Assembly (NCBI GenBank): GCA_000320545.1
Contig: ADNK01000014.1
Span: 1 to 64,000, forward strand
Direction: 5' to 3'
DNA length: 64,000 bases
Origin: Bigelowiella natans CCMP2755
Taxonomy: Eukaryota; Protista; Cercozoa
A model generated the notes under the pieces. The model had not been told where the DNA came from, did not search any database, and was given only the letters and a program-made list of their open reading frames with translations. Positions within the stretch are counted from its first letter, which is position 1. Each line of letters starts with the position of its first letter. This document shows positions 49,424-58,995 of the stretch, in pieces. The translations under genes and the position numbers were made by a program.

Positions 49424-51286
49424 TAAGATGAAATAGAATTTGAACACCGAACCCCCCTACACTCTTCTCCTCGCCGCCAAACGCACTCTACAGATACAAA
49501 TCATTTCTTCCTCGTCGCTCCACCCGTCGTTCGAAGCGGTACTACTGCGAATGGCTGCTACGGCAAGGGAGGGCAACCTACTACCTGTGTTGCCACGCCT
49601 GGCGCTAGTAGTCCCTCTTATATCACTTCTGCTCTTATCATCGAATGGTTGATAATTTATCACGCAACACTGCTCTGGTTTCCCTTTAATACCATCAAGA
49701 GCTGTCTTCAATTCCTGTAGTCTCGCCGTCCTAGCAGCGTCACGAAACGCTTTTAGCACCCGCCCCTTCCCCCCCTCCTCCAGCATTCGCATTATCGAAG
49801 CAGAAGCGGGAAGATTGTGGTGTTGGCCGAGTTGATCGTGGCGGGTGCGGAGAGCCATGACGACGTCCTTTAGTTCTGCTGACGCCGTCGAGTCACGATT
49901 CGAAGCTATATCCTGTGCACAACTATGGTCGCGACCACGATATGCCACCTTCGCTTTGGCCGACCGTATCAAGTAGAGGCTTGACTCATAAGACATCATA
50001 GCAATAGAGATGATCAACGCGGTGTCACCGATGCAGTTGCGGGCATTGACATCTGCTCCTCCATTTTCAACGAGGAGCCTTGCTATCTCCGAGGAAGCTC
50101 GAGGCCTCTCTACGGCCAGCATGAGAGCCGTCATCTTGTGTCCAGAGGTCCTCAAGTTCGCATTCGCCTTTCTCTCGATCAAAACACCTACGATCTCCGC
50201 ATTACCATTGGCAGCTGCAACCATCAATGCTGATCTCGACGCTTTGCCGGTTTGGTTCACGTCGACCTTGTAGTCATCGAGAAGCGCTACGACAACGTCT
50301 TTGTGACCGTTGATGATGGCATGATGGAGAGGGGGTACCCCATGTTTATCGGGCGTTCTAAGCATAATTAGCGATGCTGACGATGTTGATGCTGGTGAGT
50401 GACTAGCGCTTGTACTACTACTTTTGTAGTGCGTGGCTACAAAACTTCGGAGTTCACTGAGTTGCCCTTTTTTGCAAAATTGATAGACATTTTGGACATG
50501 GCTGCCTATCTCTTTTCCCTTCTCCGATTTACCCTTCTTCTCCCCATCATTACCATCCTTAATCTTCTTCTTCAGCATCTCTATAATATCCTGAGGATGG
50601 TCCCGCCGTACATATCTGAATGCTGTGAAATTGTACTCTTTCGACTTGTAGAAAGCATCAGCTTTTGCTTCTTGCACAAGATGCCTCACTATGCTGAAGT
50701 GACCAAAACATGTGGCGAGGATAAGGGCCGTATCGCCCGAGCAGCCCTCCCTATTAAGGTATGATTGAAGCTTTTCAGCGTCCATACGCGCAACACCTGC
50801 GGCAGTTAGGGTCTTCACAACATGTAAGTGCCCAGCTCCACAAGCAAACATGAGCGCTGACCAGCCCTCCGTGCTTGTTGCATCCAGGCTGGCCTTTGAT
50901 TCAATGAGGAAGTTCACAGTCTCTTGTTGTCCTTCACTTGCAGCTACCATGAGAGATGTGAGACCTAGGCCTTCATTCCTGGAATCAATGTCGACACGAG
51001 ATGATATTAGAGTTCGTAGAAGTTGGACATTCCCAACCGCCGCTCCCTCCATCCATTGAGTGGGGGCTGCGTATGGAAGCTTATTTTGACACTGATGCAC
51101 CCCCTCCTGAGAAATATCTATGGTTGTGCTGTAGACATCGTCCAAGTATGCGTACATATCAAGCTTTTCAATTGGGGCGAGGCCCGTGGCAATGGCCAGT
51201 TTATAGGGATTGCTCATCTGCACACCATTCTCCACATCATCGTCATCAAGCTCTTCGTGCTCGCTGTCTTTACTTGTCAGGCTCAT
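48777..51286 (-). CDS. Ankyrin-repeat protein (two exons: 51286-~49585 and ~49297-48777)
   Basis: Repeated G.T.LM.AA..G...V..LL...A.VN motifs. The splice ACAG|gtagtagg...cctcag|TTTTG rebuilds the consensus RRGNTVLMLAAMYGH. Confidence 0.9.
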
Positions 51287-51535
51287 ACGAGATCTCCCCC
51301 CTTCTCCGCTCCGTTGGACAGTCGGAAGTCGTATGTCACAGGGAAGGGGCTAATCTAAGGAGCACAAAAAGTGTTGTCGTAGCACAAAAATTACCTACGT
51401 TCTCCACACTTCTTTCTTCGACAACTCGACCCGCGCTAAAACAAGAAAATCCCATGGTATTATTTCGTAAAATCCGTAGTTTATCTTGTCGCATTATTCA
51501 AAGGCCGAAAAGCCCGAACGACGATCGCTGCGCTC
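51287..51535. promoter_or_regulatory. Probable compact bidirectional promoter region (ankyrin / RPAP2)
   Basis: About 250 bp between divergent ATGs; free of microsatellites. Confidence 0.5.
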
Positions 51536-53896
51536 ATGAACTATGGGCGCCCGGAGGGAGAAGCGGCGCGGCAGACAAAGCCCACGCCTGCCGTGAAACA
51601 TGCCATCAGGGAGAGGATGGAGCAGTACCTCATCCGAAAAAAGGTTGGTGTCTGTGAGGGTCGTGATCTTATTATTCCCAGGGTGAGCATTGGCTGCTTC
51701 GTCAATTCGAAGAAGCGGGGAATGCATGCATGTGTTCAGCCGCCACGATGTGAAATATCTCTTTTGGTACAAAGGAGACGGAAAATTACATTAAACATGG
51801 ATACGTTGTAGTTGTTAAAAAGAGTTCCCTCCTCTTCTTTCTTACCTTTCTTCCACCTCCCCACCCCCCCTCGGCAGATGAGGTCATTCCTCTTCCAAGT
51901 CAAGACTCGCTTAGCTCGCCCCGAAACTACCAAAAGCGACCTTAAAAGGTGGTGGTGGTGGTGATGATGATTATGATTGGGTGAGGGCGTGAAAATGAAA
52001 GCATATCTTTATAAGATAATACATAGACACAATACGTGTATTATTTGTGTGTGTGTGTGTGGAAATGCATGATGTGGATTATATGCCTTCGTATTTACGT
52101 GTAAAAGAACTCACATTCCCCGATTTTAAAGAATAGAAACTTCTGATGATCCTTCATGGTGTGCTGAGTATGTGTGCATGTGGTACCGCATATATGTGGG
52201 GGCCGTGGTGTAGATGCCGCCATTTGCTCCGCCCCATTCACTACGATGAGGTTCTCGAGGAGAGGCAAAGTCACCACATTTGCAGCTACCCCGGCTGTCG
52301 TAAGACCCTCCCAGAGACACAAAGCAAGTCAACTGCTAAGAAGAGTGCATTCGTGCTTCTGAAGGTCCTCGTTTCCGAACAGCTAATGGAAGAAGATCAA
52401 AGGGGAGAGGGAGGAGGAAGATGATGGAATAGGGACGAGGGAACAAAAAAATGGAGAGCCATCAATATATTGCTAGAAACTTTTTTTGTTATTTATTTGT
52501 TGCTTACACGTGCTATGGTTTCCTCCCATGACAATTTATATCTGGTTAGCCGCACGTTGTGGAGGATAGGAAGCGTGTGTCCGCAATCATCGAGAAGCTG
52601 AGATCGAGCGGTTTCTCAAGCAAGTATGCTTGATTGGTGTTTGCTACAAAAGAGGAGAATAGAGTGGGGTGGGGGGGAAGTAAGGGGAGTAAGGGGAGTG
52701 AGGGATTGAGGGAGGGTGCAGTTTGTAAGCTAATGTATGACGATACCTTTATTTCCCCTCTCCGTTGGGTTTGCCTTGAACCTTTCATTAGAATTGTGCT
52801 TCAGTCCCGCCAGATCCTTCCTCGCTCGATAGCGTCTGAATTGTGCCGCAGTAGCAGCAGTAGCAACAGCAATAGCGTGGAGCAGCTTGTGTCAGGAGAG
52901 AGCATTGCGATGCTCGTGACTTGGAAGAAGGTGAAAGCGGAGGAGATGAAGAACAACAACAAGAACAACAAGAAGACGAAGAAGAAAAGAGACGAATATG
53001 ATACTAGGTCAAAGATTAGAGATAGTCCTGATGAAAAGGAGGAAAAGAGTATGGATTATAATGACAACGACGACAAGCCTTCTGCTGGTACTACAACTAC
53101 TACCACTACGGAAGAGTCTGCCCTCGCTGCCATCAAAGAGCTGCTCCAGCTCGTAGGGCCGGAGGATCCAGAAGTCGCCAGAAATACAGCGCCGCATTCT
53201 CTAAGAGCAATCTACGGAGAGACTATAGCGAAAAACGCAATCTACTGCAGCAAGGTGTGTGTGTGTGTGTGTGTTGGGGGGAGGGGGGGGGTGGAGGTAT
53301 ACTGACAATGGTGACGACATTCACTGTTCATAATAATATTTATAATAAATGCTGATGTGTGTCGTCAGGATGTAGCACAGCGGGATCGAGATGGGAGGCT
53401 GTTTTTTGGGCAATACTTCCGTGCTGATGGCCGTGTTCTTCCAATTGGCGGGTATGATATCTAGTAACACTCTCTACCTTTATGTGCTTTCTATTGGGGG
53501 GTATAATCCATCACTACTCTCTGCTTTTACTGCGGAACATTTCCTTGTGATGATGGGATTTGGGCGTCACAGGCAGCAGCACCTCGACTCATCTAAACTT
53601 CTGAGGAGGCCTGACACCGTATATAAGGTAGTAGTAGTAGTAGCAGTAGCAGTAGTAATAGTAGAAAGAGGGAGGAGGGGGGGAGGATTAGAAGCTGCTA
53701 AGAACCAAAGAAAATGCCCTTGAAAAGCCCAAACAAACTACTGCTGTTCATGAGATGATAACAACCCCCTTTTGTCTACTAACACCAAACAGGTCGATCC
53801 TGCGAAAAACCTTTGGTTTGATGTGACGGAGGGAGAGCGCTTCTGCTGCGCCGACTGTGCCACTGACTCTGAAATCTTTAAGGTAAGAGTTTATAT

Positions 53897-53937
<41 letters not shown>

Positions 53938-54015
53938 CAACCGCTAGTTTCTCTTCGTTGATAGCAACTTAAATACAATAATGATCACAATAAGCATTTC
54001 CTGTGTATATGCATG

Positions 54016-54050
<35 letters not shown>

Positions 54051-55746
54051 TGTGCGTGAGTTAATAGCATTAACACACACGCGTTTGTTTGTTGATACTT
54101 TGCTATTCTGAGCACTCAGCATTTATTTGTTGTTTTTCTTTAGCGAGGATTGAGTGATGAGCCTGTGCACCTGCGGCCTATTGCAAGCAAAATTCTCAAG
54201 ATGCTCAAAATGCAAGATTCTCGGCATGAGAAGGAAAAGATTACCCAAAGGCGAAAGACCGATATCACGAGTGGTAGTAGTAGTAGCAGCAGTAGTAGCA
54301 GCAGTAGCAGCAGGAAGAAGACGATCCTGTCCAATAAAGAGTTTGAGGCAAAACTCACCATCAACGAGTTGAGGCCAGTCTTGCATGGAAAGGGAAACGA
54401 AAACGGGGGAAATGGAGATGACACACCATCACCATCATCAAAACCACTTGCTGCTACTGCTACTGCTGCTGCCCAAGTAGCAGATGTAGGAGGAGGAGGA
54501 GGAGGAGGAGCTGAACAGAGAGTAGCATCTCCTACCCAGTCAACTCACCCCTCTTCCATTACGCACAACAAGAAGAAGAACAATAACAACAACAATATCA
54601 CCGCAAAGGCATCAGCACCTCCACCACAAGCAAAGCAAGTTGCAGCTGTAGCAGCGGTGACATCGAACAGAAGTCGGAATATTAGCAATACTCCGACTAA
54701 TGCCGGTGATAGTAGTAGTAGTAGTAGTAATAGTAGTGGTGGTAGAAGTAGTAACGTGAAGCGAGTGCTACGAGCAAGTCTGTCCGAAGATGGAACGCAT
54801 TTGACTATGGAGAACACCACTGTACCATCGTCATCATCGTCGTCGTCATCACCGCCGTCAACGACTATGATGAACAACGCGACAGCGCCTGGAAGAGGGA
54901 GGATGAGTGAGAGGAAGGACGAAGGGAAGAAGAATGCTAGTAAAGGAGGAGGAAGGAAGGGAGTCGTCTGTCCTCCATGTAGTACAACTGTTGATAGTAG
55001 GACGCAATCGCAATCGGGTGGTGGCTTTCTGAAAGGAATCTATCAATTTCCAGGAAGGAAACAAGATGCTACTGCTGCTGATAATGATGATGGAAAAAGA
55101 AGAAGTGATAGTAGTAGCAACGGTAGAGCTGTATGGAGTGTGGGCGCTACCCTTGAGGATGCACTCGCAAGCCCTTCGAGCGATAAGTTTTATAGTCTCC
55201 TCGACGATGACGACGACGACGACGACAAAGAAGGATGCCATCAAGGGGGTTCAAGCAGCGATGGTGGTGGTGATGATCACGGTGAGGAGGACGATGACGA
55301 CGAAGATGGGGAGGCGGCGAAGGCCAGGAGGTGAAATATATGTATATATATTTTTATATTATATTTGACGACCTTACATTTGTTTCCCTGCCGTCCTATT
55401 TCCAGCGTTGTAGCACTCTATGATGATATGTTAATGGTGACTTATCCTGTAAGCAAGAGCAGCGCGGGATGAAAGGACCGTCGTGTTTGCGTTGGTTCCC
55501 GGATCTTATTATTATGTTTATTACCTGTAAGGAGAGCATTCTACGAAGGGCGACGACAGAAGCTTCTGCGCAGGTCTCATCGCCTCATACAACCCTGACG
55601 TCACTGTCGTAAACTGATGACGATGCTGAGAATTGACACCGCTTCGTCTCCCTTCATCTTCATGTGGGCCTGTATCATTCTCCGCTGAAGCCGAGGGAAA
55701 ATAACTCAATTCTTTTCTTTTTTTCCCCCCCCCCCCCCCCCCCCCC

Positions 55747-55790
<44 letters not shown>

Positions 55791-56088
55791 GGGTAACAAG
55801 TTTTATGTCGATGACGACTGACAAAACGGCAGCTTTCATAAGTCCGAAGCGTAGCGACGACGAACGCTACGACGATGTGAAAAGGCAACAAGGAAAAGAC
55901 ATTTTCGACATACGGGTCCAGTCTTATTTCTTTCAATATATTTACCGCAGCTCCGAAAAATCAATAATGACGATGGTGATGATAATGATGATGTGGTGTG
56001 TGATACGGCTATTTCTGCAAGCTGCCGCGGCTTAATGATATTGATGTCGGCATAGCTTCATGTCGCGCCGCCTCTACTATTAGCAACA

Positions 56089-56128
<40 letters not shown>

Positions 56129-56679
56129 CCCCTCTCTATAGGATCGTGGAATTCGATCGAAAGCTCTGGCAGAGTACCTGCAGCCTCGTATCATAGATAT
56201 CGCTGTGAGGCAAGTCGGCGTCCCGCGTCAGATGGTGAACAGGATCATCGAGCTCATGATGTATCTCATCCATACGTTCCGCCTACAGGTCAATCAACGT
56301 TGTGCACTGACTTTGCTTTGATAAATTGAATTGATGAAGAGTCTAGGATGTTCTTCCTCTTTGCACGTCATATCATTCTCGCCCCGCTATGCAGCAGCAG
56401 CATCGGCAGCAGCAGTAGCAGCAGTAGCAGCTCGAGTATTTTTCTGAGATGTCCATCTGATACGTCGCATTTCGAACACAGACCATCCCAGGACTTGAGG
56501 AGAAAGAGTGGAAACGGATGGCATACGTGGTTTTGACGCTAATTTCGTATCGAATCCCGAAGGTACGCACGCTTCTAGTTGCTGTTGCAGAGTCAGGCTT
56601 CCAGAAGCTTGATCCAGATCTTAAGGTTTTCAATACTGAATTCAAAGTCGAAGCTTTCATAGATTCTATCCTTCGCTGA
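51536..56679 (+). CDS. RPAP2: RPAP2/Rtr1 RNA Pol II CTD phosphatase homologue with an inserted NDP-kinase-like domain
   Basis: HLLRPIHYDEVLEERQSHHICSYPGCRKTLP (52213-52317) is the first half of the Rtr1 zinc finger. VYK|VDPAKNLWFDVTEGERFCCADCATDSEIFK|RGLSDEPVHLRP is the second half. The C-terminal LIHTFRLQ|TIPGLEEKEWKRMAYVVLTLI matches the RPAP2 tail; stop TGA 56677-56679. Confidence 0.85.
52340..53410 (+). other. Group II (NME5/7-like) NDP-kinase-like domain nested in RPAP2, catalytic His absent
   Basis: KSAFVLLK|PHVVEDRKRVSAIIEKLRSSGF...VEQLVSGESIAMLV...LLQLVGPEDPEVARNTAPHSLRAIYGETIAKNAIYCSK|DVAQRDRDGRLFF, compared with the consensus T+.++KP....GF.I...SGP...GP.DP..A....P.SLRA.YG....NA+HGSD...RE+.+FF. 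Confidence 0.85.
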
Positions 56680-57461: not shown

Positions 57462-58995
57462 TCATTTCTCTGACAATGGGTGCGATATGCAAGATTCGAG
57501 GTACTTGACGATTTCTTCAAAGCCTACTATCTGCGAAGCCAAATCTTCGATATAATTTCCTAAATATATTTCGGCCATTCCCTGGTCGAGTCCGTCAAAG
57601 TGCCTGAAAAATTATTTATGCTTTTTGAGTCGTACGTAGAAGAAAATATCAGTTTCGAGCTACCGTTTAACGTTGGGCACGTATTCAGCTGCCTTCTTTG
57701 TAGTCTTTTCCGAGGGATTGCACCACATCTCGTAAGCAGTTTTCTTAATGTCTGTCTGTGAAAGGAAAGAAGGAGCCTCGGATTCAACCTGTTCCAGGTA
57801 TTTATTGTGCTCCTTAATCTCGTGGGACTCTTCATAAATTTCAAATGGGCACGCAGTCGTGATATTTTCTCCAAATCTATAGAGACTCTCGTATCTCGCT
57901 TGTTTAAGCTCCGTGACATACGACAGAATCCTCTCCTTTGGCAGGATGGCTTTTATGAGCTGTCGCAAGAATTCAGAGATTACTCGGATTGTTTCTACAA
58001 AGCCCCAATCTACATCCACTGGGAACGACTCGAGCCATGCTTTATTTGCACCATGAACAGTTTTTGATGCAGACCAAATATTTGCTGAAATCGAGGTTTT
58101 TGATATAGTCTCGACACGATGGAACCATAGAGGGGGGACATATAATAGATCGCCAGCACTCAGAGTCACAGTCATCATTCCCGATGAAGGGTCACTAAAT
58201 AAAGATTTGAAAGTCTTCTCATCCTCTAGGTCTGCAATTACATTTCGGTGTTGATGATGAAATTTGGGATATAGTTGAAGGCGTGCCCAAGCGCTTGGTG
58301 GGAGCAACGTGAAGGTTTTTGAGCCGTAGATTTGCACGAAGAAATTATGCATTTCATCAAAGTGCGTGGGAGTGACCACTCCTTTGCTTCCTATCCAAAG
58401 ATGAGCTTTTAAGATCACATCTCCAGCTTCTTTCGCCGCATCTATAGGGACCTCTTTCATGTCGAACATATCAAGGTTTATTTCCCGCCCCGCCCATACC
58501 TTTCCAAAGTGGCTAAGAGGACCAGAGAAGTATATGTACTCTTCTTCCGACCCGGCTTCGCAGCGCTCGATTGCCTCTCGAAGTTCTACACGATGCAAAG
58601 CACAACAACCCATGTGAAACACGTTTCCTGTCGAATTCTTTACGGGAATTTTGGCCTTTCCAAGCATTCCGGAAAGTGTGGTTGGAGTCCATTTAGCGCT
58701 CCGCCATCCGTTTACAGGAGAATTCTTAATCAAGGCTGGACGCATCGGCTGGGAGATGTATTGTCGGATTGAGTCACCACGTTTCCATTCGAATATAGCT
58801 AGTTGTGTATTTGCAGCTTCCTTGTTGGGGCTTCTTTCTCCTTCGACTGCTGATCAATCACATCGAATTTCAGGCGGGGGAAAGCGAAGCCATGCAATCG
58901 CACAAACCTGTCGCTGTTGCGTGAGCCTGAAGACTCGGGAAGCTTATATGGCTCCAGAGCGTCACTGCGAACATTATCGGCACCCGAGCAACCAT
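57462..58995 (-). CDS. JmjC (Cupin_8; JMJD5/FIH/HSPBAP1-like) 2OG-Fe(II) hydroxylase with putative N-terminal signal peptide, 3 exons
   Basis: LWIGSKGVVTPTHFDEMHNFFVQIYGSKTFTLLPP...LSAGDLLYVPPLWFHRVET gives an intact HxD...H triad. First exon MVARVPIMFAVTLWSHISFPSLQAHATAT (58995-58908). Last exon HFDGLDQGMAEIYLGNYIEDL...SEK*. Confidence 0.88.

What the first reader, a model, noticed from the sequence alone, without database searches (positions are those of the whole stretch)
52213..54185. A whole NDP-kinase domain is inserted inside the zinc finger of RPAP2/Rtr1
Seen: in-frame splicing gives the first Rtr1 Zn ligands (CSYPGC), then a complete NDK-fold sequence (AFVLLKP...GPEDPEVARNTAPHSLRAIYG...NAIYCS...LFF), then the remaining ligands (FCCADC) and the normal RPAP2 tail. 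Known: in RPAP2/Rtr1 the two Cys pairs are only about 30 residues apart; the protein acts on Pol II CTD Ser5P and on Pol II biogenesis/import with GPN GTPases. Inference: a domain-in-domain insertion I do not recognise from other eukaryotes. It could couple nucleotide sensing or oligomerisation to Pol II maturation.
Basis: partly seen in the sequence, partly recalled or inferred. Interest (0 to 1): 0.88.

Follow-up and report, generated by a model that had tools for sequence, protein, structure and literature searches.

The report
RPAP2/Rtr1 gene with inserted dead NDK domain
This alga's only detectable copy of RPAP2/Rtr1, a conserved helper of RNA polymerase II, is a real, spliced gene with a nucleoside-diphosphate-kinase-fold domain lying between the two halves of its zinc site; the domain has lost its catalytic histidine, so it is probably a binding module, not an enzyme.

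Summary
Transcript contigs from three studies run as one spliced RNA through the Rtr1 N-half exon, the NDK exons and the Rtr1 C-half exon.

The insert lies where human RPAP2 has K108/L109, just after the C-x4-C knuckle. That leaves 264 residues between the Cys pairs, against 30 in human.

One other sequence shares the design. It is a 629-aa ORF on a 2.3-kb JGI contig (P0136), colinear with the window's exons.

The insert is a group-II (NME7/NME5-like) NDK fold. In both proteins the catalytic His is Tyr, and the Arg88 and Tyr52 equivalents are also lost. It is therefore a pseudo-kinase, most likely a non-catalytic binding module on a Pol II biogenesis factor.

No other Rtr1 gene was found in this 91-Mb genome, and no paper describing the design turned up. 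I rate it a new variant of a known kind, of moderate interest. Its function is inferred, not shown. The scan's other note on this stretch is the same first-reader finding.

The parts
51536..51643 (+). Exon 1: first ATG of the transcript and 36 codons. This N-terminal extension is absent from orthologue P0136.
   Evidence: Transcript contigs begin at 51509/51517 and join 51643 to 51878. Frame and GT donor checked.
51878..51948 (+). Exon 2: N-terminal helix (MRSFLFQVKTRLARP...), 48% identical to P0136 residues 1-23.
52214..52364 (+). Exon 3: Rtr1 N-half (RPIHYDEVLEER...CSYPGC), a linker, and the first NDK strand (SAFVLLK).
   Evidence: Pfam RPAP2_Rtr1 positions 2-38, 36.6 bits. Aligns to human RPAP2 residues 78-110.
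52281..52298 (+). First zinc knuckle, C-S-Y-P-G-C, equivalent to human RPAP2 C100 and C105.
   Evidence: Alignment; direct reading of the sequence.
52344..53407 (+). NDK-like pseudo-kinase domain, interrupted by introns 3, 4 and 5. It runs from SAFVLLK to GRLFF.
   Evidence: Pfam NDK match; NME7 and NME5 matches in the PDB; the orthologue's equivalent region folds as NDK (pLDDT 87-98; Foldseek TM 0.8-0.85 on target length).
52550..52623 (+). Exon 4: NDK helix 1 (PHVVEDRKRVSAIIEKLRSSGFSS).
   Evidence: Joints listed; 45% identical to P0136 residues 82-103.
52792..53254 (+). Exon 5: the body of the NDK-like domain.
52925..53116 (+). Low-complexity Lys/Asn/Asp/Thr loop of about 64 residues inside the NDK fold, after the strand GESIAMLVTW. 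It contains KKTKKKR, is absent from P0136, and is kept in the mRNA.
   Evidence: Contig pieces 52792-53246 lie on it with no gaps; alignment.
53243..53245 (+). TAC (Tyr) codon at the position of the NDK catalytic histidine (NAIYCS against NAVHCT in NME7).
   Evidence: Alignments. P0136 has NAMYCS at the same place.
53369..53451 (+). Exon 6: last NDK helix (DVAQRDRDGRLFF) and the start of the return linker.
   Evidence: Joint 53451/53573 listed; frame checked.
53573..53627 (+). Exon 7: return linker, ending in TVYK, the start of the Rtr1 beta-hairpin.
   Evidence: Equivalent to human Y117-K118 by way of the orthologue alignment.
53793..53882 (+). Exon 8: Rtr1 C-half (VDPAKNLWFDVTEGERFCCADCATDSEIFK).
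   Evidence: Pfam RPAP2_Rtr1 positions 48-71; 50% identical to P0136 residues 248-277.
53844..53858 (+). Second zinc-ligand pair, C-x3-C (C-C-A-D-C), equivalent to human C136 and C140.
   Evidence: Orthologue alignment to human RPAP2 combined; direct reading of the sequence.
54144..55330 (+). Exon 9: conserved RGLSDEPVHLRPIASKIL, followed by a long low-complexity middle region.
55532..55573 (+). Exon 10.
   Evidence: Joint 55330/55532 seen in three runs.
55789..55915 (+). Exon 11.
   Evidence: Contig pieces; frame checked.
56142..56288 (+). Exon 12: C-terminal helical region.
   Evidence: Contig pieces; frame checked.
56482..56679 (+). Exon 13: conserved C-terminal tail (..MAYVVLTLISYRIPKVRTLL..) and the TGA stop. 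The acceptor at 56481 is inferred, because the reads were laid only to 56400.
   Evidence: 37.5% identical to P0136 residues 577-624. The contig's remaining length fits this exon.

Best explanation
One expressed 13-exon gene encodes the only detectable RPAP2/Rtr1 orthologue of this genome. Earlier notes of this scan call the organism the chlorarachniophyte Bigelowiella natans; I did not verify that. A complete group-II (NME7/NME5-like) NDK fold was inserted into the surface loop that follows the first zinc knuckle (human K108/L109) and precedes the beta-hairpin that touches the RPB1 jaw in human RPAP2. The Rtr1 core on both sides is intact, so the protein should still sit between the RPB1 jaw and RPB5 of Pol II. 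The inserted domain has Tyr for the catalytic His and has lost the Arg88 and Tyr52 equivalents in both known orthologues. It cannot work as an NDP kinase. Most likely it serves as a non-catalytic module, an added binding or steric surface at the polymerase jaw/cleft side of the factor. Shown: the gene structure, its expression, the insertion point, the fold of the insert, the residue losses, and conservation in a second organism. Inferred: that the zinc site still closes, and that the insert acts by binding rather than catalysis.
For: Spliced contigs from three studies cover all exons, with one contig spanning 51509-54421. Every intron is GT..AG, and the frame is open over 931 codons when checked exon by exon. 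Pfam places the Rtr1 halves on exons 3 and 8 and NDK on exon 5. PDB matches are to RPAP2 and to NME7/NME5. P0136 carries RPAP2_Rtr1 (E 1.7e-16, two stretches) plus NDK (E 2.3e-10) and is colinear with the window's exons. Both halves of P0136 abut at human residue 108. The NDK core is about as conserved between the two organisms (57-61% identity) as the Rtr1 core (50-53%), which argues for constraint on the insert. His->Tyr, Arg88->Leu/Met and Tyr52->Cys/Phe are shared by both. The AF2 model of the orthologue's insert has pLDDT 87-98 and Foldseek TM 0.8-0.85 to NDKs. This is the only PF04181 locus in the genome. Group-II NMEs are mostly non-enzymatic structural proteins (PMC13256974). The region between the ligand pairs already differs between yeast and human and contacts the RPB1 jaw (PMC8140126).
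Against: No experiment or model shows that the zinc site forms with 264 residues between the ligand pairs; the AF2 model of the Rtr1 part was below pLDDT 50 for lack of alignment depth. Lys12, Arg105 and Asn115 equivalents remain, so nucleotide or phosphate binding is not excluded. Contigs drop rare isoforms, and the one raw RNA run gave only 8 reads. Only two organisms are known to carry the design, so the conservation rests on a single comparison.
Confidence: 0.7

Rival explanations
1. The insert is a working nucleotide sensor or local NDP kinase that couples guanine-nucleotide state to Pol II maturation. For example, it could act on or read the GPN1-GPN3 GTPases that RPAP2 tethers.
For: Human RPAP2 senses the GDP or GTP state of GPN1-GPN3, and its N-terminus crosslinks near them (PMC13486763). 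Lys12, Arg105, Asn115 and Ser120 equivalents are kept.
Against: The catalytic His is Tyr, and the Arg88 and Tyr52 equivalents are lost in both orthologues. NDK catalysis needs the phosphohistidine (PMC13256974). In human RPAP2 the GPN1-binding part is C-terminal, not the Pol II-binding N-terminal domain.
Confidence: 0.12
2. The insert is switched by alternative splicing. Skipping exons 4-7 (675 nt, in frame) would leave 39 residues between the Cys pairs, close to the canonical 30. The cell could then make both a plain Rtr1 and an NDK-bearing form.
For: Exon 3 ends and exon 8 starts in phase 0, and exons 4-7 sum to 675 nt, which is 225 codons.
Against: No 52364-to-53793 joint appears in the contigs of three studies. 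The orthologue's mRNA also carries the insert. A skipped form would keep a stray NDK strand and lose the TVYK start of the hairpin.
Confidence: 0.08
3. The insert is a tolerated passenger in a permissive loop and has no function of its own.
For: The loop between the ligand pairs is variable across eukaryotes (PMC8140126). This genome's proteins often carry low-complexity expansions, as in exons 5 and 9.
Against: The NDK core is as conserved between the two orthologues as the Rtr1 core, and the fold is predicted with high confidence. A passenger should decay.
Confidence: 0.08
4. The NDK exons belong to a separate nested gene, or the model is an assembly or annotation artefact.
For: None found.
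Against: Single contigs span Rtr1-N, NDK and Rtr1-C in three studies. An independent mRNA contig from another organism has the same single ORF.
Confidence: 0.02

Closest known systems
Human RPAP2 / yeast Rtr1 (Pfam PF04181; PDB 7B7U, 7F4G, 5C2Y, 4FC8)
   Same: The helical N-terminal domain has the P-x-H-Y-x-[DE]-V-[VL]-x-E-R motif, the C-x4-C knuckle, a Y-K-[IV]...[YF]-[DN]-[IV]-[ST]-E hairpin and F-C-x3-C. The acidic residues that contact RPB5 in human (D89, D92, E93) read E, E, E here. A long disordered middle and a conserved helical C-terminus follow.
   Different: There are 264 residues between the ligand pairs, against 30 in human (212 in P0136), because an NDK fold sits at K108/L109. The C-terminal region shows no detectable sequence match to human RPAP2.
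Group-II NDK/NME proteins: NME7 (CFAP67) domain B, NME5, TXNDC3/6
   Same: These are the best sequence and fold matches. They share the motif L-x-G-P-x-D-P-E-x-A-R...S-L-R-A-x-[YF]-G...N-A-x-x-C-[ST], and they are often non-catalytic and used as structural modules in larger assemblies.
   Different: In those proteins the domain is free-standing or in tandem, fused to DM10, Dpy-30 or thioredoxin, and works in axonemes. Here a single copy is nested inside a zinc-binding domain of a Pol II factor, with Tyr for His.
RP2 (XRP2) C-terminal NDK-like domain (from my own knowledge)
   Same: An NDK fold without kinase activity, used as an accessory domain of a regulator that works with a small GTPase.
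   Different: In RP2 the domain is appended at the C-terminus rather than inserted. I tested no sequence relationship here.

Membership tests
RPAP2/Rtr1 (PF04181) | Profile match above Pfam's gathering score | tested here: met
   Exon 3 alone scores 36.6 bits against the 33-bit cut-off; exon 8 adds positions 48-71. The orthologue P0136 scores 60.7 bits.
RPAP2/Rtr1 (PF04181) | Four zinc ligands: C-x4-C and C-x3-[CH] | tested here: met
   CSYPGC at 52281-52298 and CCADC at 53844-53858 align to human C100/C105 and C136/C140.
RPAP2/Rtr1 (PF04181) | About 30 residues between the two ligand pairs | tested here: not met
   The count is 264 residues in the window and 212 in P0136, against 30 in human RPAP2.
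RPAP2/Rtr1 (PF04181) | Acidic residues that contact RPB5 (human D89, D92, E93) | tested here: met
   In the alignment these positions read E, E, E. The contact residues are taken from PMC8140126.
RPAP2/Rtr1 (PF04181) | Zinc site actually folds; binding to Pol II | tested here: inconclusive
   The AF2 model of the orthologue's residues 1-330 gives pLDDT below 50 for the Rtr1 part, because no Rtr1 sequences were available for the alignment. Binding cannot be tested with these tools.
RPAP2/Rtr1 (PF04181) | C-terminal GPN1-binding helical domain (human residues 359-389 and 490-608, PMC13486763) | tested here: inconclusive
   The C-terminal exons are conserved with P0136 but have no PDB or Pfam match.
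NDK (PF00334), group II | NDK fold | tested here: met
   The orthologue's insert has pLDDT 87-98 and Foldseek TM 0.8-0.85 (on target length) to NDKs. The window's exons align colinearly to it.
NDK (PF00334), group II | Profile match above Pfam's gathering score | tested here: inconclusive
   Window exon 5 alone scores 21.7 bits, below 27, but it holds only part of the domain and the joined protein was not searched. The orthologue scores 40.9 bits.
NDK (PF00334), group II | Catalytic histidine (H118 of NME1) | tested here: not met
   The window has Tyr (TAC, 53243-53245) and P0136 has Tyr, aligned to the His of NME7 and other NDKs.
NDK (PF00334), group II | Phosphate and nucleotide contacts K12, R105, N115, S120 | tested here: met
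   LLK|PH, SLRA and N-A-I-Y-C-S are read. The residue list is from my own knowledge of NDK structures.
NDK (PF00334), group II | R88 and Y52 equivalents | tested here: not met
   The Arg88 position is Leu in the window and Met in P0136. The Tyr52 position is Cys in the window (read by eye against P0136) and Phe in P0136.

The most novel reading that the evidence does not exclude
The dead NDK fold keeps a phosphate or nucleotide pocket (Lys12, Arg105, Asn115, plus the new Tyr). It could use that pocket, from its place beside the Pol II jaw, to read a phosphorylated or nucleotide-bound partner: the GDP/GTP state of GPN1-GPN3, or the phospho-CTD. Pol II release or import would then be gated by a module that no other known RPAP2 has.
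Probability: 0.1. Interest if true: 0.7.

Novelty: new variant of a known kind. Interest (0 to 1): 0.42.

Why it matters
RPAP2/Rtr1 is a universal and much-debated Pol II factor, variously described as an import adaptor, an initiation checkpoint, or a CTD phosphatase. A natural variant that tolerates a 230-residue folded domain between its zinc ligands shows that this loop is permissive. It points to the surface that faces away from the polymerase. It also offers a natural experiment on what can be added at the RPB1-jaw side of the factor. In addition, it is one more example of an NDK fold reused as a non-enzymatic module outside cilia. The effect is lineage-restricted as far as I could see, so the interest is moderate.

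Tried and rejected
- **Joined model left out.** All Pfam, PDB and BLAST work was done exon by exon by reference, and split codons were checked one at a time.
- **More orthologues.**
  - Three word-index searches with P0136 (whole, residues 1-300, residues 228-320) returned only P0136 itself plus thioredoxin-NDK proteins.
  - The ESM Atlas gave only generic NDK clusters with scores below 0.8.
  - The metagenome scan with LVGPEDPE / [RK]NA[MI]YCSK returned one contig (L006), a thioredoxin protein with several NDK domains and no Rtr1 domain.
- **Short high-identity NDK fragments.** P0123 lies in NME7-like two-domain genes. P0120's 1.85-kb contigs show no Rtr1 motif.
- **Second Rtr1 gene.** Two weak PF04181 hits on other contigs (E 0.04 and 0.5) contain no Rtr1-like ORF.
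- **Fragment alignments.** MAFFT alignments of exon fragments against P0136 (A1, A2) misplaced pieces and were not used for residue calls. BLAST of single exons and the alignment A5 were used instead.
- **Zinc-site closure.** The AF2 model cannot answer this, because the Rtr1 part has low confidence.
- **C-terminus.** Exon 13 has no PDB match.
- **Odd joint.** Joint 54847 to 55972 (AT..AC, one run, 21-nt side) is treated as a low-complexity artefact.
Full report
**What is in the sequence**

The region is eukaryotic, with short GT..AG introns. Exon 52214-52364 translates to CRHLLRPIHYDEVLEERQSHHICSYPGCRKTLPETQSKSTAKKSAFVLLK. It matches Pfam RPAP2_Rtr1 positions 2-38 of 75 at 36.6 bits, above the family cut-off on its own. 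Exon 53793-53882 (VDPAKNLWFDVTEGERFCCADCATDSEIFK) matches positions 48-71. Exon 52792-53254, between them, matches NDK positions 61-116 at E 2e-4. Against solved structures, the NDK exon matches NME7 chains at E 4e-10 and also NME5, TXNDC6 and a bacterial NDK. Exon 3 matches human RPAP2 residues 78-110.

**Is it one transcript?**

I laid Logan contigs from three different studies, plus one raw RNA run, on 50900-56400.

- The contigs lack the introns, so they come from spliced RNA.
- Joints 51643/51878, 52364/52550, 52623/52792, 53451/53573 and 55330/55532 are listed in all three runs, each GT..AG.
- One 1718-nt contig (X2, record 13) covers 51509-54421. The record coordinates between its listed pieces fit exactly the exon lengths I derive for the joints that the tool dropped at microsatellites (53254/53369, 53627/53793, 53882/54144).
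- No joint links exon 3 directly to exon 8.
- The raw run gave only 8 reads and adds nothing.

**The gene model**

Phase arithmetic and a script that translated each exon separately give 13 exons, 12 GT..AG introns of 114-265 nt, 2796 coding nt and 931 codons.

| Exon | Coordinates |
|---|---|
| 1 | 51536-51643 |
| 2 | 51878-51948 |
| 3 | 52214-52364 |
| 4 | 52550-52623 |
| 5 | 52792-53254 |
| 6 | 53369-53451 |
| 7 | 53573-53627 |
| 8 | 53793-53882 |
| 9 | 54144-55330 |
| 10 | 55532-55573 |
| 11 | 55789-55915 |
| 12 | 56142-56288 |
| 13 | 56482-56679 |

The last acceptor (56481) is inferred, because the laid stretch ended at 56400. The contig's remaining 445 nt and the match of exon 13 to the orthologue's C-terminus support it.

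Three boundaries are off by one base. The intron 53452-53572 was missed. The gene extends both upstream (two exons) and downstream (four exons).

**Where the insert sits**

Human RPAP2 reads ...C100-GYPL-C105-QKK108[28 protein letters not shown]136-SNF-C140. The orthologue P0136 aligns to residues 65-108 with its N-part and from residue 108 onward with its C-part. The window's exons are colinear with P0136.

The NDK fold plus linkers therefore replaces the short loop after the first zinc knuckle. That loop lies directly before the two-strand 'insertion' (residues 116-128), which contacts the RPB1 jaw in the Pol II-RPAP2 structure and which differs from yeast Rtr1 (PMC8140126).

Between the second and third ligand there are 264 residues in the window, 212 in P0136 and 30 in human. 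The residues that contact RPB5 in human (D89, D92, E93) read E, E, E here.

**What the insert is**

It is a complete NDK fold of the group-II (NME7/NME5) type. The equivalent region of P0136 is modelled with pLDDT 87-98. It superposes on NDKs with a TM-score of 0.8-0.85 normalised to the target.

It is not a kinase.

- The catalytic His (H118 of NME1, which carries the phosphohistidine of the ping-pong reaction; PMC13256974) is Tyr. The codon is TAC at 53243-53245, giving NAIYCS, aligned to NAVHCT of NME7. P0136 has NAMYCS.
- In the alignment, the Arg88 equivalent is Leu in the window and Met in P0136.
- The Tyr52 equivalent is Cys in the window (read by eye against P0136) and Phe in P0136.
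- The Lys12, Arg105, Asn115 and Ser120 equivalents remain.

The window's copy also carries a low-complexity loop of about 64 residues (52925-53116, containing KKTKKKR). This loop is present in the mRNA and absent from P0136.

**Conservation and distribution**

A HMMER search of 1.84 billion representative proteins with exon 5 returned mostly multi-NDK proteins. Among the single-stretch, high-identity hits, P0136 (629 aa) carries RPAP2_Rtr1 in two stretches (E 1.7e-16) and NDK at residues 76-217 (E 2.3e-10). It is a full ORF on a 2298-nt contig of JGI sample 3300017015, and so it looks like an mRNA from another organism.

| Window exon | Identity to P0136 |
|---|---|
| Exon 2 | 48% |
| Exon 3 | 33% over 57 columns including a gap; 50% over the 28-residue core |
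| Exon 4 | 45% |
| Exon 5 tail | 61% |
| Exon 8 | 50% |
| Exon 13 | 37.5% |

The insert is therefore as constrained as the host domain, and the His-to-Tyr change predates the split of the two organisms. Further searches found no third instance. None of these searches is exhaustive for eukaryotic transcriptomes.

In the window's own 91.4-Mb assembly this is the only PF04181 locus; two weak hits are spurious. The nearest NDK paralogue is only 44% identical over the motif, so the insert is not a recent copy.

Earlier notes of this scan name the genome Bigelowiella natans. I did not verify that.

**How it probably works**

- *Shown:* a single expressed gene; an intact Rtr1 core on either side; an NDK fold without its catalytic residues; conservation in a second organism.
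- *From the literature:* RPAP2's N-terminal domain binds between the RPB1 jaw and RPB5 and blocks downstream DNA (PMC8140126). Its C-terminal part binds GPN1-GPN3 and prefers their GDP state (PMC13486763). Most group-II NMEs lack NDPK activity and act as structural parts (PMC13256974).
- *Inferred:* the insert is a non-catalytic module that projects from the loop next to the jaw-contacting hairpin and adds a binding or steric surface.

Whether the insert still binds a nucleotide or a phosphorylated partner is open; this is the most novel reading, and I give it about 10%. Exons 4-7 sum to 675 nt between two phase-0 boundaries, so an in-frame skipped isoform is possible. No contig shows it.

**Novelty**

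No paper in the library holds RPAP2 with nucleoside diphosphate kinase. The one paper holding Rtr1 with that term is an unrelated proteomics list. Bigelowiella occurs in none of the eight papers listed for Bigelowiella, RPAP2 or Rtr1; all eight hold only the other two terms.

The design does exist, unnamed, in one database protein with both Pfam domains precomputed. I rate it a new variant of a known kind. It is a curious, lineage-restricted decoration of a central Pol II factor, with an untested function.

Noticed in passing
window 49457-51286 (-) and 57660-58745 (-): Both neighbours lie on the opposite strand: an intronless 609-aa ankyrin-repeat ORF upstream and a Cupin_8/JmjC ORF downstream. 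Contigs over the ankyrin gene reach 51358 and the RPAP2 contigs begin at 51509, so the two divergent genes share a spacer of about 150 nt.
   Followed up: partly
window 53255-53275, 53899-53936, 54018-54048, 55727-55786, 56092-56126: Microsatellites sit at or beside splice sites. (GT)n starts exactly at the donor of intron 5. Poly-C followed by (CT)n runs up to the acceptor of exon 11, and (CT)n lies just upstream of the acceptor of exon 12. These repeats made the reads tool drop several joints.
   Followed up: no
window 52925-53116: A lineage-specific Lys/Asn/Asp/Thr-rich loop inside the NDK fold contains KKTKKKR, which looks like a nuclear localisation signal. P0136 lacks this loop but has a Lys/Thr/Asp-rich linker before its NDK domain.
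   Followed up: no
P0111, P0090, P0120, P0121; L006:1060: Other NDK-like domains in unrelated architectures also lack the catalytic His. P0111 has NAIYGS in a 528-aa protein rich in Ser/Pro. P0090 has NAVYCS. P0120 has NAIYGS. P0121 has NAVFCA. The first NDK domain of the thioredoxin-NDK protein on L006 has NAIYCS. P0090 and P0121 share a similar C-terminal tail. His-to-Tyr NDK pseudo-kinases may be a wider, undescribed subgroup.
   Followed up: partly
window 54827-54853, 55067-55096 and 55969-55993: Many contigs break or run on into unrelated sequence at low-complexity coding repeats. One run shows an AT..AC 'joint' from 54847 to 55972 with a 21-nt side. These are probably assembly chimeras between transcripts that share repeats.
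   Followed up: no
window 51536-51643: Exon 1 adds 36 residues in frame before the Met that aligns with the orthologue's start (exon 2, 51878). Which ATG is used is not known. 51536 is the first ATG in the transcript contigs.
   Followed up: partly
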